NCBI GenBank assembly: GCA_977020255.1
Contig: CDROCS010006288.1
Span: 1-64,000, forward strand
Reading direction: 5' to 3'
Origin: Obrimoposthia wandeli
Lineage: Eukaryota
DNA length: 64,000 nucleotides
The translations under genes were made by a program, and so were the position numbers. Each line of letters opens with the position of its first letter. The stretch's first letter is position 1. Shown one piece after another: positions 2,023 to 43,563 of this stretch. The notes beneath the pieces are model-generated. The model was not told the origin of the DNA. It did no database searches and was given only the letters and a program-made list of their open reading frames with translations.

Positions 2023-3231
2023 GTGATCACAACAGACGTATTAATAATTGGTGCCGGCGCGGCAGGCTTAATGTGTGCAGCTCAAGCAGGCTACCGCGGT
2101 AAAAGCGTTGTTGTGGTTGATATGGGGAAAAAACCCGCTCGAAAAGTATTAATCAGTGGTGGCGGTCGTTGTAATTTCACCAATGAAAATACAAGCCCTG
2201 AAAATTATCTTTGTCAGAATCCACACTTTGCCAAATCTGCATTAAGTCGCTATAGCGCGCAAGACTTCATTGATTTAGTGGATCGCCATGGTTTGAAGTA
2301 TCACCATAAAACACTAGGGCAATTATTTTGTGATGACAGTGCGCAAGACCTAGTTGATATATTGATGACCGAATGTGATTGGGCAGGCGTAAAGCTAGAG
2401 TTGCGCACTGAAGTATTATCGGTCAGCAAAGTAGAAAGCAAGGTTACTGGTGGTGAGGAGCTGGGTTATTTAGTGACTACGAATGACAAAAGCTATCAAT
2501 GTAAATCATTAGTTGTGGCTTCTGGCGGCTTAACTATGCCTAAATTAGGCGCAACACCCATAGGTTATAAAATTGCTGAGCAATTTGATTTAAACGTGCT
2601 GGAAACCCTAGCGGCATTAGTGCCGTTCACCTTGCATGAACACGATAAACAACGTTTTGATGGTTTATCTGGTATTAGCCTATTGACCGAAGTCACCAGT
2701 GAAAATGGTACCTCTTTTAAAGAAAATATTTTATTTACTCACCGTGGTTTATCAGGGCCTGCGATATTACAAATATCGTCTTTTTGGCGTGCAGGACAGG
2801 CAGTTACCATTAACTTATTGCCGGAAACTAACCTTAGTGAAACCTTAATTCAGTGGCAAAGCGATCAAGGGCAGAAGTCGGTGAAAAACCTGCTAGCGAC
2901 CTTATTACCTAAACGCTTTGTTGAAGTTTTGGTTAAAGATGGTGTTATTGCAGATAAACCAATCAAACAACTTAATCATCAAGATATTTCAGCACTAAGT
3001 GACTATTTACATGCGTGGCAGATAAAGCCAAACGGTACTGAAGGCTACCGAACAGCCGAAGTTACTTTAGGTGGTGTCGATACGGATGAAATTTCTTCAA
3101 AAAGCTTTGAAAGTAAAAAACAGCAAGGGCTGTTCTTTATTGGGGAAGTCATTGATGTAACAGGTTGGTTAGGCGGCTACAATTTCCAGTTTTGCTGGGC
3201 TAGTGGATATGCTTGTGGTCAAGCGGTCTAG
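2023..3231 (+). CDS. yhiN: HI0933/YhiN (BaiN-like) family FAD/NAD(P)-dependent flavoprotein
   Basis: GAGAAG dinucleotide motif, KVLISGGGRCNFTN, FTHRGLSGPAIL, AEVTLGGV, GWLGGYNFQ motifs. Confidence 0.9.
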   Translation: MITTDVLIIGAGAAGLMCAAQAGYRGKSVVVVDMGKKPARKVLISGGGRCNFTNENTSPENYLCQNPHFAKSALSRYSAQDFIDLVDRHGLKYHHKTLGQLFCDDSAQDLVDILMTECDWAGVKLELRTEVLSVSKVESKVTGGEELGYLVTTNDKSYQCKSLVVASGGLTMPKLGATPIGYKIAEQFDLNVLETLAALVPFTLHEHDKQRFDGLSGISLLTEVTSENGTSFKENILFTHRGLSGPAILQISSFWRAGQAVTINLLPETNLSETLIQWQSDQGQKSVKNLLATLLPKRFVEVLVKDGVIADKPIKQLNHQDISALSDYLHAWQIKPNGTEGYRTAEVTLGGVDTDEISSKSFESKKQQGLFFIGEVIDVTGWLGGYNFQFCWASGYACGQAV

Positions 3232-3347
3232 TTTGGTTTTAGTAGATGAATTTATTGGAATATTTTTTCGTTAGTTAACGTTTGAAGATATTTTATAAAA
3301 AATTGTAAATAGGCAGATTTAGTCAACAAATTTTTAGGAGAAATAGT

Positions 3348-4196
3348 ATGAAAGTTATACACCTAAATCATCCAATCGATGATCAAGAAAGATCAGAGTT
3401 GCTATTTTCTGGCCATTTATTAGTTTATACCCAACGTGAATCCATGATTGAACTCATTGAATTTACAAAAGCTTTATTAAAGGAACACTTGGGCGAATTA
3501 GATCCAACTCTTGCCCAGCATCAACTGAGTAAAGAATGTTTTTTAAAAGCGACCGGTGCTGCTCAGACCCAATTTCGTCGCAGTGATAAAGCACGACAGT
3601 TATTTTTTCGTGCACTCATTGAATGCGGTATAGACCCAAAGACTTGCTATTATGACCATTTCCCGTTGAGAGTTGTCCCCTTTGCAGAACAACACAAAGG
3701 GGCAGACCGTGCTGCGATTGGTCATCATAGAGATACTTGGGGTAGCAATATTAATTGCCAACAAAATTGGTGGGCCCCTATTTTTGATTTAACAACAGAA
3801 CGTACTATTGCCATCTACCCAGATTACTGGGAAAAACCACTCGCTAATACAACTGCAACGTGGTGTTTTGATACCTTGTTAGAAAAACGAAATGAAGCTC
3901 AAAGGGAGCGTAGTTTCAATTATCCCAGTGCCCCTTCACCCATAGAAAAAGTTAACGAGGACGGGGTATTAAAGCTGATAATCCAGCCAGGAGATGTATT
4001 AAATTTTGCTAGCGCACAGTTACATGCAAGTGTACCAAACACGTCTAGTTCGACACGCTTTAGTGTAGAAATGCGTACTATAAGCGTAGAAGATTTAAAT
4101 ACCAAGCGCCAAGCTCCCAATCTAGATAACGCAGGGACAATACCTATGTATTCATGGTTTAAAAATATTGAAACGAAAAAAGCGCTAGTCTACTAG
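3348..4196 (+). CDS. Hypothetical protein, probable Fe(II)/2-oxoglutarate-dependent dioxygenase fold
   Basis: HRD (HxD) motif, distal His in PGDVLNFASAQLHAS, and C-terminal RFS (RxS); clear RBS (aggag). Confidence 0.55.
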   Translation: MKVIHLNHPIDDQERSELLFSGHLLVYTQRESMIELIEFTKALLKEHLGELDPTLAQHQLSKECFLKATGAAQTQFRRSDKARQLFFRALIECGIDPKTCYYDHFPLRVVPFAEQHKGADRAAIGHHRDTWGSNINCQQNWWAPIFDLTTERTIAIYPDYWEKPLANTTATWCFDTLLEKRNEAQRERSFNYPSAPSPIEKVNEDGVLKLIIQPGDVLNFASAQLHASVPNTSSSTRFSVEMRTISVEDLNTKRQAPNLDNAGTIPMYSWFKNIETKKALVY

Positions 4197-4239
4197 AAGC
4201 GCATATAGTGTAGGTTGCAAGATAGCTCCACTGGTGTGG

Positions 4240-4845
4240 CTAAGAAAAAAAACTTAAAAAAGGCTTACCTTGAGTCGTCATCAACCAGCCTAGCGTTGCG
4301 GTATTAACAAATACAGTGAACCAAAATGCGATCCTAAACTCCTTCTTTTTAGATTTATGCCTAAGTATTTGTTGCGCAATGGCTGCGCCAGGCCATCCTC
4401 CAATTAAGGCTAACAGGTGTAAAGTGCTTTCTTGTGTACGCCATTCGCCTCGCTGTGCTTTTGACTTATCAAAGGCATAGGCGAGAAAAGTAATAATACT
4501 AACGCCTATGTAAATCAGTAATATTTTCTGGGGCAGGTAACCAAGAAAAAAAGCAACAGCTACAAAAGTAATAAATATCAGGGATAGATAAATCGAGAAT
4601 GTACTTATGTTTTTGGTTTGCTTGCTATGTGATTTTTCACCAGAAAAAATAGCCTGATCTGCGCAATATCTACCTTGGTTGTCTTGTATTACTGAGAAGG
4701 TAATAACATCATTGATTTTGGGTATTCTATTTCGATTTTTTAAAGCCGTTTTGTGTATGAAAATAGCATCACCGCCGCCATTTGGCGTAATAAAGCCAAA
4801 GGCTTTGTCGGCATTCCATTTAACGAACTTTCCTTTCAAACGCAT
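4240..4845 (-). CDS. Cold-shock domain + DUF1294 membrane domain fusion protein
   Basis: N-terminal KGKFVKWNADKAFGFI...FIH (CSD RNP motifs); C-terminal AYAFDKSKAQRGEWRTQESTLHLLALIGGWPGA...RHK (DUF1294). Confidence 0.85.
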   Translation of the reverse strand: MRLKGKFVKWNADKAFGFITPNGGGDAIFIHKTALKNRNRIPKINDVITFSVIQDNQGRYCADQAIFSGEKSHSKQTKNISTFSIYLSLIFITFVAVAFFLGYLPQKILLIYIGVSIITFLAYAFDKSKAQRGEWRTQESTLHLLALIGGWPGAAIAQQILRHKSKKKEFRIAFWFTVFVNTATLGWLMTTQGKPFLSFFS

Positions 4846-4879
4846 ATTATCTTCCTTGATTTAGTGTGCAGTATTTATT

Positions 4880-6126
4880 TTATGAGATGAGACCTTTCAG
4901 CGCGATAAACACTGTACTTGTTCTATCTTGCTCAGCACAAATACTCAGTAAGTCGTCGATAAAGTGGTTTAACGCTCTGTGCTCTATTTGTTGAACATTT
5001 TCTTGCTGTGCGGGGGTGAGCATTTGATAGCTAGTCGCAGCACCAAAATCGCCAAAAATGATATTACCTTGAGCATCAAATAAGGTGTTATGAGCGTATA
5101 AGTCACCGTGACATACCTGATTTTTATGTAAGTGCGCGAACACATCTTGCATCTGGCTAACGATGTTACTAATAAGCGTAATGGGTAAACTGAAACCTTG
5201 CGGGAAGGTATCTCGAGTGCAGCTATTAAAGCAAGGAGGTAAACCAAGGTTTTGGTAATTTTCAGGGATCAGAGTCATGATTAACGCAAGGTAGTTTTCT
5301 TCATTTACTTGCGCTAATGATTCTACTAGATTTGAGTGATAGCCTACTTGTAAGCAAGCTTGTAATTCATCTTGCGGGTAACCATCACTGGTAATTTCAC
5401 CTTTAAATACTTTTACTGCAATATCTTCAGGAAATTGTGATTGTGGTGTATTCCAATGTGCCTTTGAAATAACACCCGAAGCGCCCTGACCTAATACATT
5501 TAAGGTGTGCTTGTTGATGATGTTCAATAGAACGGACTTAACTTTTGGCGTTAGTTTGCCAGCAACTGCTTAAATGGGTTGCCAGCAGTTAAAAACCGGC
5601 CACCTGGCAGGTTCAATAATTGTTCAGGGCATTGTGTTAGTTTATTAGCAGAAATACGTACGAGCTCCAAATTATGGGCTTGCGCTAATGTTTGCGGTAA
5701 ATGTGTTAACTGGTTCCCCGCCAATGCTAACTTTTGTAATCTCGGTCGCTCACCTAAACTATTTGGTAAAGTTTCAATTAAGTTATCTGTTAAAATCAAC
5801 CAACGCAATTGAGTAGGTAATGAATGTTCCGCTACTTGTTTTATTTGGTTCGATTTAAAGCCAACCATTTCAAGGTTTGGTAACTGTCCTAATACTTCGG
5901 GCAAGTGTTCAAATTTATTCTGTGAAGCGAAAATAATTTTTAGTTTTGTCGTGCTGCGCCAACTCACTTGGTAGTATGATAAAAAGCATTATTAGGATAA
6001 GTTTTGATTCAAGCTGCTTCAGCAAGTTAAAATTTCAATGGGAATGTGTCAGATTTTCGATAATTTTAATTGCCACGCCAGCGAGTTCGCCAAGCGAAGT
6101 TTGAGAAAAAGCGGGTAGCGCAACAT
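4880..6126 (-). pseudogene. Leucine-rich-repeat + Ser/Thr protein kinase-like gene, frameshifted
   Basis: 5551..5967 holds LRRs (LPEVLGQLPNLEMV, LRWLILTDNLIETLP). 4880..5527 holds kinase motifs LGQGASG, IAVK, HGDLYAHN, DFG. Further LRR-like fragments run in shifting frames up to an ATG near 6126. Confidence 0.7.
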
Positions 6127-6259
6127 AAAGCGTCCGTAGATATGATTAAAAACGGCGCTAGTGTACAAGAAATTTTTCGTTAAAGCTTGGGCTATTGATC
6201 AATGGTTTTAATCAATTTACATGTGGAAATAATTTCTTTTGACAATGAAATTAAGGATT

Positions 6260-6562
6260 TTACTTCTTTTGGTATTTAGGATGTAATCTCAAATAATCAC
6301 ACCAAACACTAAAATTAGTATGGTTGTAACGGATATCTGTTGCGGTAAACCATCTTGAATATCCAATGGCTTGGAGACGAAACAATACTTTATTACCATC
6401 AATGGCAACATGACAAATTAAGTTTTCCATTGTGTCGTTGCTTACTTGAACTTGGGTAAAACCGTTGGCGTTACGTTGATGTTTCACTGTTATTTTGGGC
6501 ATAGCTAATGCACTAACAGAAAATAATAATGCAGTGATTAAAGCGAATACTTTTATAACCAT
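6260..6562 (-). CDS. Small secreted hypothetical protein
   Basis: 100-aa ORF with Sec signal peptide (…SVSALA|MPK) and two Cys. Confidence 0.65.
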   Translation of the reverse strand: MVIKVFALITALLFSVSALAMPKITVKHQRNANGFTQVQVSNDTMENLICHVAIDGNKVLFRLQAIGYSRWFTATDIRYNHTNFSVWCDYLRLHPKYQKK

Positions 6563-6728
6563 CGTTGTATTTTTTGTATCATTTAGAAAATAATGTGAAG
6601 TTTAGCATTGAAAGCTAATTAAGTGTCTCCATAACTTATAACAACGCAGTAATTTCATTCTAGTTATTGCAATTCAATAACAATATTAAAAAAGATGCTC
6701 CATAAAAGCATTTACAAGAGATAAAGTA

Positions 6729-7508
6729 ATGGCTAATTTCGTCCCTGTTAGAAAAGAACAACATCAAAATCTTAAACTTGCTAGCAAGCGCGATCTTGCA
6801 CATGTTGCTGGTCAACACATTGTTTCATTAACCGCTGCTGAATATGCGCAAGCATCAGCAAGTTTTCCTGTAGTGTTGGTTAAAAACCCAGATTCACCAC
6901 GTTACCGTAGTGTTGCTATGTTGGGTTTAGAAGCAGGCGAGAACTTATATTATAAAGATGATAAATGGAGTGCTTTATCATTACCACAAAGTGTTGGTAT
7001 GGCACCATTTGCTTTAGGTCTAGATCCTGACAAAGAAAATACTCTAACAGCCTGTGTTGATATAGATAGTACTTTAGTTGCTGAAGATAAAGAGCTTGCA
7101 TTATTTGAAGCAGACGGAAAAGAATCAGAGTTATTAGCTAACGTACAAAATTCATTAGGTCGTTTATATGAAAATGAAAAAATGACTGAAAATTTTATTA
7201 AAGAACTTGAAGAAAATGATTTATTACAAGAGCTTGAATTAAATATTGATTTGAGTAATGGCGAAAAGAAAAAACTTACCGGTATCTTCACTGTTAACGA
7301 AGACAAAGTGAAAACATTAGCCGATGATAAAGTACTAGATTTCCATAAACGTGGCTTATTTGTCCCAATTTATGCGATGTTAGGTTCTTTAGGTCAAATC
7401 AACCGTTTAGTTCAATTGCGTAACCTAACAAGTAACGCTCCAATTACCAGTATCCAAATCGCACCATTAGCTAAAGAAGAAGTACAAGAAGGCGTTGCAG
7501 AGAGTTAA
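6729..7508 (+). CDS. SapC family protein
   Basis: HQNLKL, EYAQASASFPVV, AMLGLEAGENLY, YAMLGSLGQINRL pattern typical of SapC (PF07277-like); RBS and terminator present. Confidence 0.8.
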   Translation: MANFVPVRKEQHQNLKLASKRDLAHVAGQHIVSLTAAEYAQASASFPVVLVKNPDSPRYRSVAMLGLEAGENLYYKDDKWSALSLPQSVGMAPFALGLDPDKENTLTACVDIDSTLVAEDKELALFEADGKESELLANVQNSLGRLYENEKMTENFIKELEENDLLQELELNIDLSNGEKKKLTGIFTVNEDKVKTLADDKVLDFHKRGLFVPIYAMLGSLGQINRLVQLRNLTSNAPITSIQIAPLAKEEVQEGVAES

Positions 7509-39823: not shown

Positions 39824-40561
39824 ATGTTAAAAGAATCAAGGTTCAAGGAATCCCCACTAAATGAATCACCGATTAAAAATAACTCCTTAAAAAACTGGCC
39901 GGAAATGGAAAGGCCACGAGAGAAATTAGTCAGTTTAGGTTCGTCAAGTTTAAGTGATGCTGAGTTGTTGGCCATATTTCTTCGCACAGGAGTAAGAGGG
40001 TGTAATGTAGTCGATCTAGCGAGGCAACTATTGACTAGTTTCGGTAGTCTGAGTGCTATATTTTCGGCAAGCCAAGAAGATTTCTGCGCAAGGCATGGAC
40101 TCGGGACGGCAAAGTATGTGCAATTACAAGCCTGTTTAGAAATGTCTAAACGTTATTTGGCAGAGACTATTAAAGAGACAGATTGTTCTTTAACTTCTTC
40201 ACAAGCCACAAGAGATTACTTACTCAGTGAGTTGCGCTTAGAAACTCGTGAAATATTTGCTGTGCTTTTTTTAGATAATCAGCATCGAGTATTAACATTT
40301 GAACGATTGTTTTTTGGTACCCTTAACGCCGCAGCAGTGTACCCTCGAATTGTGGTAGAACAAGTCCTAAAACATCATGCGGCAGCGGTAATTTTAACTC
40401 ATAATCATCCCTCTGGTGTCGCTGAGGCGAGTCTCGCCGACAAGCAAATAACAGATAAATTAATTCAAGCGCTACAATTGATTGATGTGCGTGTATTAGA
40501 TCATATTATTGTAGCAGGACATCAGTGTTATTCGTTTGCTGAGCATGGAGAGCTTATATAA
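39824..40561 (+). CDS. radC: RadC/YicR family JAB-domain protein
   Basis: [26 protein letters not shown]…D JAMM motif, LDHII. Confidence 0.93.
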
Positions 40562-40603: not shown

Positions 40604-40692
40604 AGGTTGCTAAAAAGCTTAAAGGCAATTACTGTTAATAGAGCAAGTTAATAATATTAAAAGTAATAACTAAGAAAAATAAGGATTATCTG

Positions 40693-41004
40693 ATGACAGA
40701 AAGTAGTAGTGATGAGCCGGATCGTCGCCAATCATTTCGTTTAGATATGGAAAAAGAGTTAGTTGATATTATCTGGTCAGATGAACAAGGTAAAGAGCAC
40801 AGTAAGAAAATAGCTTGTCTTGATTTTTCTCGTGGTGGGTTAAAGATTGATTGTGATCAGCTTTTACCTTTGCAATCCCCAGTAACAATCGTGTTTAAAT
40901 CGGCTAGCGCCAGCAGTCAAAAACTTTATGGCAAAGTGTTGCGATGCATTAAGCAAGAAAATGGCTGGTATGAAGTTGCATTGACATTAGATCGCAATGA
41001 CTAG
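40693..41004 (+). CDS. Single-domain PilZ (c-di-GMP-binding) protein
   Basis: RxxxR (RRQSFR) and DxSxxG (DFSRGG) motifs. Confidence 0.85.
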   Translation: MTESSSDEPDRRQSFRLDMEKELVDIIWSDEQGKEHSKKIACLDFSRGGLKIDCDQLLPLQSPVTIVFKSASASSQKLYGKVLRCIKQENGWYEVALTLDRND

Positions 41005-41137
41005 TGTTACCAACAGAACTGATGCTTATATCAAGTGAAATAATAGTTCATTGAAATTGACCATAACTTGGTAAATCGTAGATTGCAGCTATAGCGCTGC
41101 AGCACGTTAATTTGATAGTAGTAAAGGATAAAAGGGT

Positions 41138-41806
41138 ATGATGATTTTAGTGGGTGGCGAAAAAGGTGGCAGTGGCAAAAGTTGTTTGGCACAGAATCTA
41201 GCCGTATATTTCGCCCGAAATAAGAAAGCAATTGTCTTAATGGTTGATTGTGATCCTCAAAGAACAACGTCTGATTGGATACAAGCAAGAAATGGTGACC
41301 CATCTCTACCCGCAATTAATTGTATTCAACTGTATGGAAAAATTCGTAATGACTTACTGAGTCTAGTGCAACACTATGATTATGTAATTGTCGATTGTGG
41401 TGGGCAAGATAACCTCGCCTTGCGAGCAGCTATGTCAGTTGCTGATCATGTAATTATCCCCTTAAGACCCAAAAGACGAGATTTAAAAACAGTGCCCCAT
41501 ATGGAAGATATGCTCAGTACTTGCAAAATGGTGAACCCGAAAATGATAGCTTCTTTTGTTATCACTCAATGCCCTTCATTACCAAACCAAATGGGTAGGA
41601 TACTTGAGGCAAAAGAGGTCTGCAGATCTTATGGGATTAATGTTTTAGATGCCATAACCTATAATCGTAATATTTATGATGATAGTGAAGAACAAGGTTC
41701 TTCTGTTATTGAATTAGACCCTACAGGTAAAGCTGCCCAAGAGATGTTCAATATTGCCGAGGAATTACTGGCGATGGAACCGGATAATTCTCATGAGTTT
41801 AACTGA
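41138..41806 (+). CDS. Short ParA-family ATPase (type Ib/ParF-like, no N-terminal HTH)
   Basis: Deviant Walker A KGGSGKS, A' VDCDPQ, Walker B VIVDCGG. Confidence 0.9.
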   Translation: MMILVGGEKGGSGKSCLAQNLAVYFARNKKAIVLMVDCDPQRTTSDWIQARNGDPSLPAINCIQLYGKIRNDLLSLVQHYDYVIVDCGGQDNLALRAAMSVADHVIIPLRPKRRDLKTVPHMEDMLSTCKMVNPKMIASFVITQCPSLPNQMGRILEAKEVCRSYGINVLDAITYNRNIYDDSEEQGSSVIELDPTGKAAQEMFNIAEELLAMEPDNSHEFN

Positions 41807-42230
41807 TTTAAAGAAAGGTAAAGCTAACAAAGCAAAAAAGAGAAACTTCACCATTGATGAGTTTATTTCCGATGCTGAAAATTACGCAAAAGGTGCGCCT
41901 GAAATTGTTAGCGAGTTAGCCAACAATGGACACGCGGGTCATAAACTTAATCTCAAACAAGCGATTAGTGAAGCTAAGCGTTATGTTGAAATGACTGAAA
42001 TAGAACACCAGCAAGCGGGAGAAGTCAAAGCAGGTGTTAGAGCTAGAGTTGTTAAACCTTTTAGGCGAGCAACATTTACGCTAAGTGAAGAAGCGATAGA
42101 ACAGTTACAAGGTTTATCTGAAGGATCAGACTTAGCTAAGTCACATATATTGCGTATTCTGATTGATGAATTGTGTAATAAAGAACAAAATGAACAATTG
42201 AAGAAATTATTGCAATCAGGAATCGGTTGA
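41793..42230 (+). CDS. ParA partner with C-terminal ribbon-helix-helix (CopG/ParG-like)
   Basis: Overlaps the parA stop; basic N-terminus then TIDEFISDAE; C-terminal RRATFTLSEEAIEQL…KSHILRILIDE beta-alpha-alpha pattern. Confidence 0.75.
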   Translation: MSLTDLKKGKANKAKKRNFTIDEFISDAENYAKGAPEIVSELANNGHAGHKLNLKQAISEAKRYVEMTEIEHQQAGEVKAGVRARVVKPFRRATFTLSEEAIEQLQGLSEGSDLAKSHILRILIDELCNKEQNEQLKKLLQSGIG

Positions 42231-42489
42231 TTGTTTAAATTTTGTTGGCTTTTTACTCTTGAAATAGACAAAATTTAGTCGAAAGCTTACCATTCAAGTG
42301 AATTTTATCTTTGTATTCCCTACTTAACTATATGAAAAAATTTGATAAATACTGTTTTTTTAGTATTTTCTTATTAAGACTAGTATTCGTTATTCAGTTT
42401 CTCTATAATATGCCACCTTTTTCAGGATCCCGAGACGACGGTCTTGGGGAACAAATAGCTCGAGCTGAAATTAATATTGGAGTACTCAC

Positions 42490-42726
42490 ATGTCTAAAAT
42501 TTGCCAAGTAACAGGCAAAGTGCCAATGGTTGGAAACAACCGTTCTCACGCAAGAAACGCGACTCGTCGTCGTTTTTTACCTAACCTTCAATCTCACCGT
42601 TTTTGGGTTGAGAGTGAAAATCGTTTCGTTAAATTACGTTTAACTCCGAAAGGAATGCGTATTATCGATAAAAAAGGTATTGATGTAGTCTTAACTGACA
42701 TCCGTGCCCGTGGCGAAAAAGTTTAA
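42490..42726 (+). CDS. rpmB: 50S ribosomal protein L28
   Basis: [10 protein letters not shown]…TRRRFLPNL. Confidence 0.98.
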
Positions 42727-43062: not shown

Positions 43063-43563
43063 ATGAAATTATCTCGGACTGGCTGGAACAACGTCATTAT
43101 TTTTTCAGTTATGACTATAATTTTATTAATCAATGCGACCAACGATAAGCTTTTTCCTAATGAAGAAAGCGGTAACAATGGTGAGCGATTAATTTTGCCA
43201 CAGCATGGTGTTATTTTAACGCTAGCGATTGATTTTTCAGAAAGCCAACGTGTGTTATTAGAACGCGTTGGTCGTAGTTGGCAATTAACCGCTAAAGGTA
43301 TAATGCTGGAAAAAACGGAACAGCAGATTGAGCAGATGATGTTTGCTTGGCAACAGAGTAGCGGCTTAGTACAGGCAGCTGAAATTATGATTGATAGTGC
43401 TCAAGGTGTTGCAGTAAAAATTGCATTGGCTGGTGAATCACAGGTAAGAACCTTTATATTATACCCATTAGACGATCAATTATTAGTTTATCAGCAACAA
43501 GATAATATTTGGTTAGCACTACCTGCAACCTTAGCCCAACAACTATTACCTGTTAGTTTGTAA
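43063..43563 (+). CDS. Membrane-anchored hypothetical protein
   Basis: N-terminal TM (WNNVIIFSVMTIILLINA); upstream of mutM. Confidence 0.75.
   Translation: MKLSRTGWNNVIIFSVMTIILLINATNDKLFPNEESGNNGERLILPQHGVILTLAIDFSESQRVLLERVGRSWQLTAKGIMLEKTEQQIEQMMFAWQQSSGLVQAAEIMIDSAQGVAVKIALAGESQVRTFILYPLDDQLLVYQQQDNIWLALPATLAQQLLPVSL

What the first reader, a model, noticed from the sequence alone, without database searches (positions are those of the whole stretch)
41005..42310. Plasmid-style type Ib ParA + RHH partner resident at the radC-rpmB locus: a positioning system with unknown cargo
A short ParA without an HTH overlaps a 145-aa partner. The partner has a basic, flexible N-terminus (KKGKANKAKKR…DEFI, like ParA-stimulating tails of ParG-type proteins) and a C-terminal ribbon-helix-helix. 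No rep, integrase, ParB or parS is in the window, and the pair interrupts the normally adjacent radC-rpmB genes. Orphan ParA/MinD ATPases are known to position non-DNA cargo (McdAB, ParC/ParP, PomXYZ), so this may be a domesticated partition module that positions a chromosomal locus or protein complex, possibly under c-di-GMP input via the adjacent PilZ. A weak direct repeat gctta-N2/4-TCAAGTGAA flanks the pair (41031, 42294) and is a candidate RHH site.
Basis: partly seen in the sequence, partly recalled or inferred. Interest (0 to 1): 0.75.

Follow-up and report, generated by a model that had tools for sequence, protein, structure and literature searches.

The report
Chromosomal ParA-RHH pair tied to c-di-GMP
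A plasmid-type DNA-positioning gene pair (a ParA ATPase and its ribbon-helix-helix DNA-binding partner) is a fixed, strongly conserved and transcribed part of the chromosome in Colwellia and its relatives. It always sits beside something that senses or makes the signal molecule c-di-GMP, which points to an undescribed signal-controlled ParA system of unknown cargo.

Summary
A 222-aa ParF-like ParA (41138-41806) overlaps by 14 nt a 145-aa partner (41793-42230). The partner has a basic N-terminal tail and a C-terminal ribbon-helix-helix (RHH). A single-domain PilZ gene lies just upstream, and the set sits between radC and rpmB.

It is not a decaying plasmid remnant:
- The order radC-PilZ-ParA-partner-rpmB is kept in all 80 Colwelliaceae species genomes fetched.
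- ParA is 86-96% identical across the family (dN/dS about 0.03), tighter than the neighbouring housekeeping enzymes.
- G+C matches the flanks.
- Metatranscriptome contigs cover the genes.

Orthologous pairs on other Alteromonadales chromosomes form one clade (100/100 support), apart from plasmid ParAs (at most 56% identity). Wherever enough flank was available, they lie next to a PilZ gene, a c-di-GMP-I riboswitch and/or a TPR-GGDEF cyclase (70 of 70 assessable metagenome loci).

The downstream copy is the decayed 3' arm of the partner's terminator, and the upstream copy is missing in the closest species. No centromere-like repeats were found, so the cargo stays unknown.

This scan had already reported the same cassette and c-di-GMP link on other DNA of this genome (s1-234678). 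I reached it independently and added the riboswitch evidence.

The parts
40607..40635 (+). Promoter-like element of the PilZ gene (-35 TTGCTA at 40607-40612, 17-nt spacer, -10 TACTGT at 40630-40635)
   Evidence: The block TTGc.aaaa-N-TTA.tTTTaa is conserved in the radC-PilZ spacer of the Colwelliaceae loci. Its function is inferred.
40693..41004 (+). Single-domain PilZ protein (103 aa), the presumed c-di-GMP receptor
   Evidence: Pfam PilZ E=1.3e-7. RRxxFR is kept in 78 of 79 loci and DF[S/A][R/K]GG in nearly all. It lies directly upstream of ParA in 78 of 79 assessable Colwelliaceae loci and is homologous to the PilZ upstream of ParA in Agarivorans (32% identity, E=3e-18).
41024..41039 (+).
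   Evidence: Present. It lies in a 46-bp block that is absent from the closest species L003 and is not conserved elsewhere.
41057..41068 (+). Promoter-like box of the parA-partner unit (TTGACCATAACT here; family consensus TTGaACTAyAAT)
   Evidence: This is the only well-conserved block in the PilZ-ParA spacer, 50-90 nt before the ATG. Metatranscriptome contig depth rises about 2-fold from PilZ into ParA in run X2. Its function is inferred.
41084..41101 (+). Inverted repeat TGCAGC-N6-GCTGCA in the 5' leader
   Evidence: Read from the sequence. It is shared only with the nearest relatives L003 and L019. Other lineages have different hairpin-like sequences at this place. Its role is unknown.
41138..41806 (+). 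ParA ATPase, 222 aa, ParF-like (type Ib) with a deviant Walker A
   Evidence: NCBIfam ParA_partition scores 142 bits (cut-off 180). PDB ParF 4dzz/5u1g E about 1e-14. PHROG ParA-like E=4e-44. It is 86-96% identical across 79 loci with dN/dS 0.027, and the first 18 residues are identical in 78 of 79 loci (one Leu-to-Ile change in L079).
41793..41909 (+). Partner residues 1-39: basic tail MSLxDLKK...K..KK followed by the FT[IV]DEFIxDAxNYAKGxPxIV motif, the presumed ParA-contact and ATPase-stimulating module
   Evidence: Invariant or near-invariant in 40 family members. The same L-x-x-L-K-K ... [DE]-F-I-x-x-A pattern occurs in partners of orthologous chromosomal pairs and of plasmid ParAs. The role is inferred by analogy with ParG-type tails.
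41793..42230 (+). Partner gene, 145 aa (tail, variable linker at residues 40-88, RHH)
   Evidence: ORF. 381 homologues, all Colwelliaceae-type among those listed. dN/dS 0.10.
42060..42173 (+). Ribbon-helix-helix DNA-binding domain (residues 90-127, FRRATFTLSE...LAKSHILRILIDEL)
   Evidence: The beta-strand residues R/H-A-T-F-T/S-L are kept across all partnered Alteromonadales lineages.
42285..42308 (+).
   Evidence: It aligns with hairpin-plus-T-run terminators in relatives whose stems differ in sequence but still pair (AAAACTCAC/GTGAGTTTT, AAAACCCAAC/GTTGGGTTTT, AAACAGCG/CGCTGTTT). 29 of 74 loci have a hairpin of -6 kcal/mol or better followed by a T-run. No stable hairpin remains in this species.

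Best explanation
This is a plasmid-derived type Ib partition cassette: a ParF-like ParA plus a ParG-like RHH partner. An ancestor of the Alteromonadales captured it, and it has since been kept as a host gene pair under strong selection.

The likely mechanism, inferred from the family:
- Partner dimers bind specific DNA through the RHH beta-ribbon.
- The lysine-rich N-terminal tail and the following DEFI helix contact ATP-bound ParA dimers spread on the nucleoid and trigger ATP hydrolysis.
- The partner-DNA complex is therefore moved or held in place along the nucleoid. At the least, the pair represses its own promoter.

What sets the system apart is c-di-GMP control. In Colwelliaceae and Agarivorans a dedicated single-domain PilZ receptor is encoded directly upstream, and it probably acts on ParA or the partner at the protein level. 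In Alteromonas, Salinimonas and Paraglaciecola the same operon is preceded by a c-di-GMP-I riboswitch and/or followed by an active-looking TPR-GGDEF cyclase.

Shown here: gene anatomy, folds, ancestry, conservation, transcription and the genomic link to c-di-GMP. Inferred: nucleoid binding, ATPase stimulation, the PilZ target and any positioning. Unknown: the DNA site or cargo.
For: **Anatomy and folds:**

**Vertical inheritance.**
- The same gene order is found in 80 of 80 Colwelliaceae species genomes.
- Median ParA identity is 91% (minimum 86%), against 74-75% for coaBC, radC and mutM and 95% for rpmB. dN/dS is 0.027.
- G+C is 0.39, like the flanks.

**Transcription.**
- In four metatranscriptome runs of one study, contigs at least 99% identical cover PilZ-ParA-partner.
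- Their depth is 4-25 times that of radC and about 1/70 that of rpmB. This stepped profile is what RNA gives, not DNA carry-over.

**Ancestry.**
- In a maximum-likelihood tree, all chromosomal Alteromonadales ParAs form one clade (100/100 support, stem length 0.62) apart from plasmid ParAs.
- The nearest plasmid ParAs, on Acinetobacter Rep plasmids, are 54-56% identical. They have a small RHH partner and obvious centromere repeats.
- Partnered ParAs of different families are 71-75% identical.

**c-di-GMP link.**
- PilZ lies upstream in Colwelliaceae and in two Agarivorans lineages at a different locus.
- A c-di-GMP-I riboswitch scoring 64-80 bits (gathering scores: 35 for RF01051, 59 for the RF03167 variant found in two loci) lies upstream of ParA in 20 loci.
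- A TPR-GGDEF protein with GGEEF and the RxxD I-site lies downstream.
- 70 of 70 assessable metagenome loci carry at least one such element.

**Partner and ParA depend on each other.** The three ParAs that have lost the partner sit on 4- to 40-fold longer branches.
Against: - No iterated centromere-like repeats lie next to the operon, and no operator is shared between lineages. The only conserved non-coding blocks are promoter-like.
- PilZ is a pseudogene in one MAG where ParA and the partner are intact, so PilZ is not strictly required.
- About 28 loci have Ala instead of Ser in the DxSxxG motif.
- ParA falls below the NCBIfam equivalog cut-off.
- The metagenome loci are not phylogenetically independent, and only about six lineages support the c-di-GMP association.
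- Transcription evidence comes from assembled contigs of one study, without strand information.
- No experiment bears on positioning.
Confidence: 0.7

Rival explanations
1. The pair is purely a regulator. The RHH protein is a transcription factor, with ParA as its ATP-dependent co-repressor (as in some type I par systems and the delta/omega pair of pSM19035). Together they control c-di-GMP-related or other target genes, and nothing is moved.
For: RHH proteins of type Ib systems autoregulate. The only conserved DNA near the operon is promoter-like. No centromere array was found. The operon itself is under a riboswitch in some lineages, which fits a regulatory cascade.
Against: ParA is kept at 86-96% identity, with an intact deviant Walker A and the full ParF-like fold. 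The partner keeps the N-terminal ParA-stimulating tail shared with true plasmid partition partners. A simple repressor would not need either. ParA diverges fast once the partner is lost, which shows the two work as a machine.
Confidence: 0.2
2. The cargo is not DNA. The pair positions a protein assembly, such as the c-di-GMP signalling proteins themselves (PilZ, the TPR-GGDEF cyclase), chemoreceptors or granules, in the manner of McdAB, ParC/ParP or PomXYZ. The RHH serves only for autoregulation or as a nucleoid tether.
For: The pair is constantly next to PilZ or a TPR-GGDEF protein. TPR domains are protein-protein adaptors. No centromere repeats were found.
Against: The partner has only two conserved modules. 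The N-terminal one is shared with plasmid partners and is therefore ParA-directed. The other is the DNA-binding RHH, whose base-reading strand is conserved across families. The linker between them varies in length and sequence, and no cargo-binding domain is visible. PilZ is dispensable in one lineage and absent from the Alteromonas branch.
Confidence: 0.15
3. The pair is a decaying remnant of an integrated plasmid or ICE, or a toxin-antitoxin or defence module, with no host function.
For: The closest non-Alteromonadales relatives are plasmid partition genes. One 52%-identical metagenomic relative lies next to an integrase.
Against: The pair is syntenic in 80 of 80 species genomes, with dN/dS 0.03-0.10, host-like G+C and transcription. 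No integrase or rep gene lies nearby, and there is no meaningful PADLOC hit: only a weak Csx3 P-loop match for ParA (E=7e-5) and nothing for the partner or PilZ.
Confidence: 0.02

Closest known systems
ParF-ParG of plasmid TP228 (type Ib partition; PDB 4dzz, 5u1g, 1p94)
   Same: A small ParA with a deviant Walker A and no HTH. A small dimeric RHH partner is encoded just downstream, with a flexible basic N-terminal tail. ParF is the best solved-structure match of this ParA (E about 1e-14).
   Different: This pair is chromosomal, vertically inherited and has no adjacent repeat array like parH. The partner does not match the Pfam ParG family and is about twice as long, with a variable linker. The coupling to PilZ, a riboswitch or GGDEF has no counterpart in TP228.
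parA plus small RHH gene of Acinetobacter Rep plasmids (for example pApiHUM1c, p94-2-p2)
   Same: These are the closest plasmid relatives. ParA is 54-56% identical over 213 residues, including the RPKRRDLKT motif. The partner shares the GLxxLKK...DEFIxGA N-terminus and the RHH.
   Different: They sit next to the replication initiator and are flanked by iterated AAGTTACGTAAGTTAA centromere repeats. They lack the ParA C-terminal tail and 17 clade-specific residues of the chromosomal clade, and have no c-di-GMP gene nearby.
Orphan ParA/MinD positioning systems (McdAB, ParC/ParP, PpfA, PomXYZ, MipZ)
   Same: A chromosomally encoded ParA-family ATPase with a dedicated small partner encoded beside it and no role in plasmid maintenance. 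NCBI names some orthologues 'MipZ'.
   Different: Those partners carry cargo-binding modules and no RHH. Here the partner is a classic DNA-binding RHH. None of those systems is known to me to be tied to c-di-GMP, and the literature searches found nothing of the kind.
CdbA/CdbS of Myxococcus xanthus (PMC7156744, PMC10313047)
   Same: An RHH DNA-binding protein involved in nucleoid organisation, linked to c-di-GMP and to a stand-alone PilZ protein.
   Different: CdbA itself binds c-di-GMP and has no ParA partner. It has no detectable sequence relation to this partner (not among the profile hits; only a weak fold hit at rank 42-47, as for any RHH).

Membership tests
Type Ib (ParF-like) ParA partition ATPase | Deviant Walker A xKGGxGK[ST] with the signature lysine | tested here: met
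   GEKGGSGKS at residues 7-15, invariant in 79 loci.
Type Ib (ParF-like) ParA partition ATPase | Small size (about 200-230 aa) with no N-terminal HTH, and sequence homology to ParF | tested here: met
   222 aa. It aligns end to end with ParF 4dzz/5u1g (E about 1e-14) and with PHROG ParA-like (E=4e-44).
Type Ib (ParF-like) ParA partition ATPase | Reaches the curated score of NCBIfam NF041546 ParA_partition (equivalog) | tested here: not met
   142 bits against a cut-off of 180. It is a relative of the curated equivalog, not a member.
Type Ib partition cassette (parA, centromere-binding protein gene, centromere) | A small centromere-binding protein gene directly downstream, often overlapping | tested here: met
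   14-nt overlap. The arrangement is kept in all partnered loci.
Type Ib partition cassette (parA, centromere-binding protein gene, centromere) | Iterated centromere repeats next to the operon | tested here: not met
   No arrays in the window or in the related chromosomal loci. They are plainly present in plasmid relative L092. Sites elsewhere in the genome could not be searched.
Type Ib partition cassette (parA, centromere-binding protein gene, centromere) | Serves a low-copy replicon (a rep gene nearby) | tested here: not met
   The context is core chromosomal, radC-rpmB.
ParG-type RHH centromere-binding protein | Ribbon-helix-helix fold | tested here: met
   (CopG overlay at 1.0 A, TM 0.86). 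The dimer was not modelled.
ParG-type RHH centromere-binding protein | Flexible basic N-terminal tail that stimulates ParA | tested here: inconclusive
   The lysine-rich, low-confidence N-terminus is conserved and shared with plasmid partners. ATPase stimulation is not testable with these tools.
ParG-type RHH centromere-binding protein | Match to Pfam ParG (PF09274) | tested here: not met
   No ParG hit at E up to 1. 28 of 40 family members hit RHH_1 instead.
PilZ c-di-GMP receptor | RxxxR and [D/N]xSxxG c-di-GMP-binding motifs | tested here: met
   RRQSFR and DFSRGG in the window. RRxxFR is present in 78 of 79 loci. The second motif has Ala for Ser in about 28 loci.
PilZ c-di-GMP receptor | Binds c-di-GMP | not testable with these tools
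   Needs DRaCALA, ITC or MST.
Orphan ParA/MinD systems for non-DNA cargo (McdAB and similar) | The partner carries a cargo-binding module and lacks a sequence-specific DNA-binding domain | tested here: not met
   The partner's only conserved modules are the ParA-directed tail and an RHH.

The most novel reading that the evidence does not exclude
A second-messenger-gated ParA machine. c-di-GMP acts through a dedicated PilZ protein in Colwelliaceae and Agarivorans, and through a riboswitch and a cognate TPR-GGDEF cyclase in Alteromonas and its relatives. It switches on or off a nucleoid-based ParA/RHH system that places a specific chromosomal site, or a complex tethered to it, within the cell. 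This would link the motile-to-sessile decision to chromosome or cell organisation across the Alteromonadales.
Probability: 0.4. Interest if true: 0.85.

Novelty: new variant of a known kind. Interest (0 to 1): 0.7.

Why it matters
ParA/MinD ATPases are the general bacterial device for placing things in the cell, and c-di-GMP is the main lifestyle signal. I know of no ParA system controlled by c-di-GMP, and four full-text searches found none.

Here three unrelated kinds of c-di-GMP element (a receptor protein, a riboswitch and a cyclase) have each become attached to one and the same conserved ParA-RHH pair. That is strong genomic evidence for such control.

The system occurs in abundant and culturable marine bacteria, among them Alteromonas, Colwellia and Agarivorans, so it can be tested directly. 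The ParA is conserved almost as tightly as ribosomal proteins, which suggests an important but unnoticed cellular role.

Tried and rejected
- **The flanking repeat as an RHH or centromere site.** Rejected as a conserved site. The downstream copy is the terminator's 3' arm, and the upstream copy lies in a 46-bp block missing from the nearest species. A role in this one species cannot be excluded.
- **13-nt perfect complementarity between the ParA Walker-A codons (41159-41171) and the rpmB leader (42411-42423).** This is chance: the synonymous sites vary freely in 79 loci.
- **A c-di-GMP or other riboswitch in the window's own leader.** None was found, even at E up to 10.
- **Canonical parS.** Absent from the window.
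- **The ACAGGCA tandem pair upstream of PilZ.** Not conserved.
- **A shared operator across lineages.** None. Colwelliaceae keep TTGaACTAyAAT, while Alteromonas keeps a different 45-bp block.
- **Fold search with the full-length partner monomer model (pLDDT 67).** It gave nothing. The domain-only model worked.
- **Defence system or toxin-antitoxin reading.** No meaningful PADLOC hit.
- **Literature.** No paper describes a PilZ-, riboswitch- or GGDEF-linked ParA pair. One search was a malformed query.
Full report
**What is there.** The window is 99.4% identical over 12.4 kb to Colwellia demingiae ACAM 459 contig NZ_VOLT01000008, so it is the same species but not the same sequence. All genes between radC (39824-40561) and rpmB (42490-42726) are on the + strand:
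- a 103-aa single-domain PilZ gene (40693-41004);
- a 222-aa ParA (41138-41806);
- a 145-aa partner (41793-42230) that overlaps ParA by 14 nt.

**ParA.** It has the deviant Walker A sequence GEKGGSGKS and no N-terminal HTH.
- It scores 142 bits on NCBIfam ParA_partition, below the 180-bit equivalog cut-off.
- Its best solved relatives are TP228 ParF (4dzz, and 5u1g in complex with a ParG peptide), E about 1e-14.
- It matches the PHROG 'ParA-like partition protein' at E=4e-44.

**The partner.** It matched no Pfam or NCBIfam family by itself. The evidence for an RHH came from other routes:
- An alignment of 40 family members shows two conserved modules separated by a variable linker.
- The C-terminal module matches CopG as a profile (E=0.003).
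- 28 of the 40 members hit Pfam RHH_1.
- A model of the last 61 residues (pLDDT 85) overlays CopG at 1.0 A with TM 0.86. The other top hits are almost all RHH proteins: ParD, PrpA, NikR, Arc, MatP and CdbA.
- The full-length monomer model was poor and found nothing.

**Not a remnant.**
- A genome scan with the partner profile returned 80 species-level genomes, all Colwelliaceae by name (Colwellia, Thalassotalea, Thalassomonas, Litorilituus, Cognaticolwellia, Pseudocolwellia, MAGs) except one labelled Endozoicomonas.
- Every locus with enough flank has the order coaBC / radC-PilZ-ParA-partner-rpmB-rpmG.
- Median ParA identity to the window protein is 91% (range 86-96%). The comparison values are 74% for coaBC, 75% for radC and mutM, 84% for coaD, and 95% and 94% for the ribosomal proteins rpmB and rpmG.
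- The partner (median 58%) and PilZ (median 64%) evolve faster but are clearly constrained. dN/dS is 0.027 for ParA and 0.10 for both the partner and PilZ.
- G+C (0.39) equals that of the flanks.
- No meaningful PADLOC defence model matches: ParA has only a weak Csx3 P-loop hit (E=7e-5), and the partner and PilZ have none.

**Transcription.** Four marine metatranscriptome runs from one study hold the stretch at 99% identity or more.
- Contigs cover PilZ, ParA and the partner. One 2,339-nt contig runs from the radC 3' end into rpmB.
- Contig depth steps from about 2-10 over radC, to 10-92 over PilZ/ParA/partner, to 2,400-6,900 over rpmB/rpmG.
- Such steps between adjacent genes are what RNA gives, not contaminating DNA.
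- These are assembled contigs, so strand, transcript ends and levels are not established.

**Transcription units.** Conserved promoter-like blocks precede PilZ (40607-40635) and ParA (41057-41068, family consensus TTGaACTAyAAT). After the partner, many relatives have a hairpin-plus-T-run terminator whose stem sequence differs between lineages but keeps pairing. The last 130 bp before rpmB are the nearly invariant rpmB promoter and leader.

GCTTA-N2/4-TCAAGTGAA occurs exactly twice in the 64 kb, on each side of the pair.
- The downstream copy aligns with the loop and 3' arm of the terminator, which has decayed in this species.
- The upstream copy lies in a 46-bp block that the closest species (L003, about 92% nucleotide identity) lacks altogether.

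It is not a conserved protein-binding site. No iterated repeats, no canonical parS and no operator shared across lineages were found.

**Where it came from.**
- A search of 1.8 billion cluster representatives found only 47 ParA relatives at E below 1e-30.
- The best plasmid matches are Acinetobacter Rep plasmids, 54-56% identical. There parA and a 95-aa gene lie beside the replication initiator.
- That small protein aligns with the RHH of the Colwellia partner (hhalign E=1.4e-4) and shares the N-terminal pattern L-x-x-L-K-K ... [D/E]-E-F-I-x-G-A.
- One such plasmid shows textbook AAGTTACGTAAGTTAA repeat arrays on both sides of the pair.
- Other relatives, about 44% identical, sit next to Rep3 genes on metagenomic plasmids or phage-plasmids.

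The cassette is therefore a true type Ib partition module by descent. The partner's conserved N-terminus is the ancestral ParA-directed part, not a new cargo adaptor.

**A chromosomal clade across the Alteromonadales.** Orthologues occur on chromosomes of Agarivorans, Alteromonas, Salinimonas, Paraglaciecola and Shewanella marina.
- In a maximum-likelihood tree, all of them together with the Colwelliaceae form one clade with 100/100 support on a long stem (0.62), apart from every plasmid ParA.
- Partnered ParAs from different families are 71-75% identical.
- The three ParAs without an RHH gene (Agarivorans sp. 1_MG, Alteromonas flava, S. marina; no remnant found by tblastn) are only 48-55% identical. 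They sit on branches of 0.74-0.91, against 0.02-0.20 for partnered ones. ParA's extreme conservation thus depends on the partner.

**The c-di-GMP link.** The pair sits at different chromosomal places in different families, but in the loci examined always beside a c-di-GMP element or, in one MAG, signalling genes.

| Lineage | Arrangement |
|---|---|
| Colwelliaceae | PilZ directly upstream in 78 of 79 assessable loci; a pseudogene in one MAG |
| Agarivorans | A homologous PilZ (32% identity, E=3e-18) directly upstream, at a different locus between an ftsN-like SPOR gene and hslVU |
| Alteromonas ponticola, Salinimonas | c-di-GMP-I riboswitch, then ParA, partner and a TPR-GGDEF protein |
| Paraglaciecola MAG | Riboswitch, then ParA, partner, and a hybrid histidine kinase plus response regulator |
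| Main Alteromonas group | ParA, partner and TPR-GGDEF, with no riboswitch |
| S. marina | A GGDEF gene four genes downstream |

- The cyclases have GGEEF, and three of the four checked also carry an RxxD I-site just upstream of it; the S. marina protein lacks it.
- Rfam found the riboswitch at 64-80 bits, 105-210 nt upstream of the ParA ATG on the same strand, in 20 loci in all. Eighteen match RF01051 (gathering score 35) and two match the RF03167 variant (64 bits, gathering score 59).
- It found none in the window, even at E up to 10.
- Of 80 metagenome loci, 70 have PilZ, a riboswitch and/or a GGDEF gene beside the pair. The other 10 end less than 1 kb after ParA.
- These loci are not independent. 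The association rests on about six lineages, but it involves three mechanistically unrelated elements.

The window's PilZ has RRQSFR and DFSRGG. The first motif is kept in 78 of 79 loci. The second has Ala for Ser in about 28 loci.

**Reading.** The simplest account is a domesticated ParF/ParG-like machine whose activity or synthesis is governed by c-di-GMP.
- The partner offers only a ParA-directed tail and a DNA-binding RHH, and the base-reading strand (R/H-A-T-F-T/S-L) is kept across families. Its direct cargo is therefore most likely DNA.
- The binding site is not visible next to the operon and could not be sought genome-wide.
- A purely regulatory role, or a protein cargo bridged by PilZ or the TPR cyclase, remains possible.
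- Four full-text literature searches found no description of such a system. The nearest thematic parallel, CdbA/CdbS of Myxococcus, has no ParA and no sequence relation.

This scan had already noted the same cassette and its c-di-GMP link on another piece of this genome (s1-234678). I saw that note after establishing synteny and the first PilZ and GGDEF contexts. I tested the claim independently and added the riboswitch, the tree, the partner-loss pattern, the selection figures and the transcription evidence.

Noticed in passing
L094:3788-3895, L095:3803-3893, L097:3759-3858 and 17 metagenome loci (for example L164:2293-2396): c-di-GMP-I riboswitch aptamers (RF01051; the RF03167 variant in L159 and L160) lie directly upstream of the orthologous parA-partner operon in Alteromonas, Salinimonas and Paraglaciecola. 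A conserved TTTTTCAGT follows the aptamer. Whether the switch turns the operon on or off was not worked out.
   Followed up: partly
L082:5001-5654, L081:5001-5693, L096:4001-4720: Three chromosomal ParAs without an RHH partner gene (Agarivorans sp. 1_MG, Alteromonas flava, Shewanella marina) have diverged far more than partnered ones (branches 0.74-0.91 against 0.02-0.2). They may have taken on another role or be decaying.
   Followed up: partly
L079:5046-5192: In one MAG (Alteromonadaceae bacterium DT_4), the PilZ gene upstream of an intact ParA and partner carries two in-frame stops, and the radC side is rearranged.
   Followed up: partly
L092:3780-4000 and 4933-5070: Acinetobacter indicus plasmid p94-2-p2 has iterated AAGTTACGTAAGTTAA palindromic repeats on both sides of its parA-partner pair. 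This is a likely centromere for this ParA subfamily.
   Followed up: no
window 42380-42489: The rpmB promoter and its roughly 80-nt leader (ATGCCACCTTTTTCAGGATCC...GCTCGAGCTGAAATTAA) are almost invariant across 74 Colwelliaceae loci but match no Rfam family. This is possibly an L28/L33 autoregulatory leader.
   Followed up: partly
window 43063-43563: A 166-aa ORF between rpmG and mutM has no Pfam or NCBIfam match. It is present, but fast-evolving (34-96% identity), in most Colwelliaceae loci.
   Followed up: no
L100, L113 and others: about 120-165 nt upstream of ParA (for example L113:2340-2385): The main Alteromonas group keeps a 45-bp block (CATTCGTTAATATCGATTTTGATGCTGA ... CTATGCTT) upstream of ParA. 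It contains an ATCGAT-centred near-palindrome and is a candidate promoter or operator of that lineage.
   Followed up: no
window 41159-41171 and 42411-42423: A 13-nt perfect complement between the ParA Walker-A codons and the rpmB leader. It was judged to be chance, because the ParA synonymous sites vary among 79 loci.
   Followed up: yes
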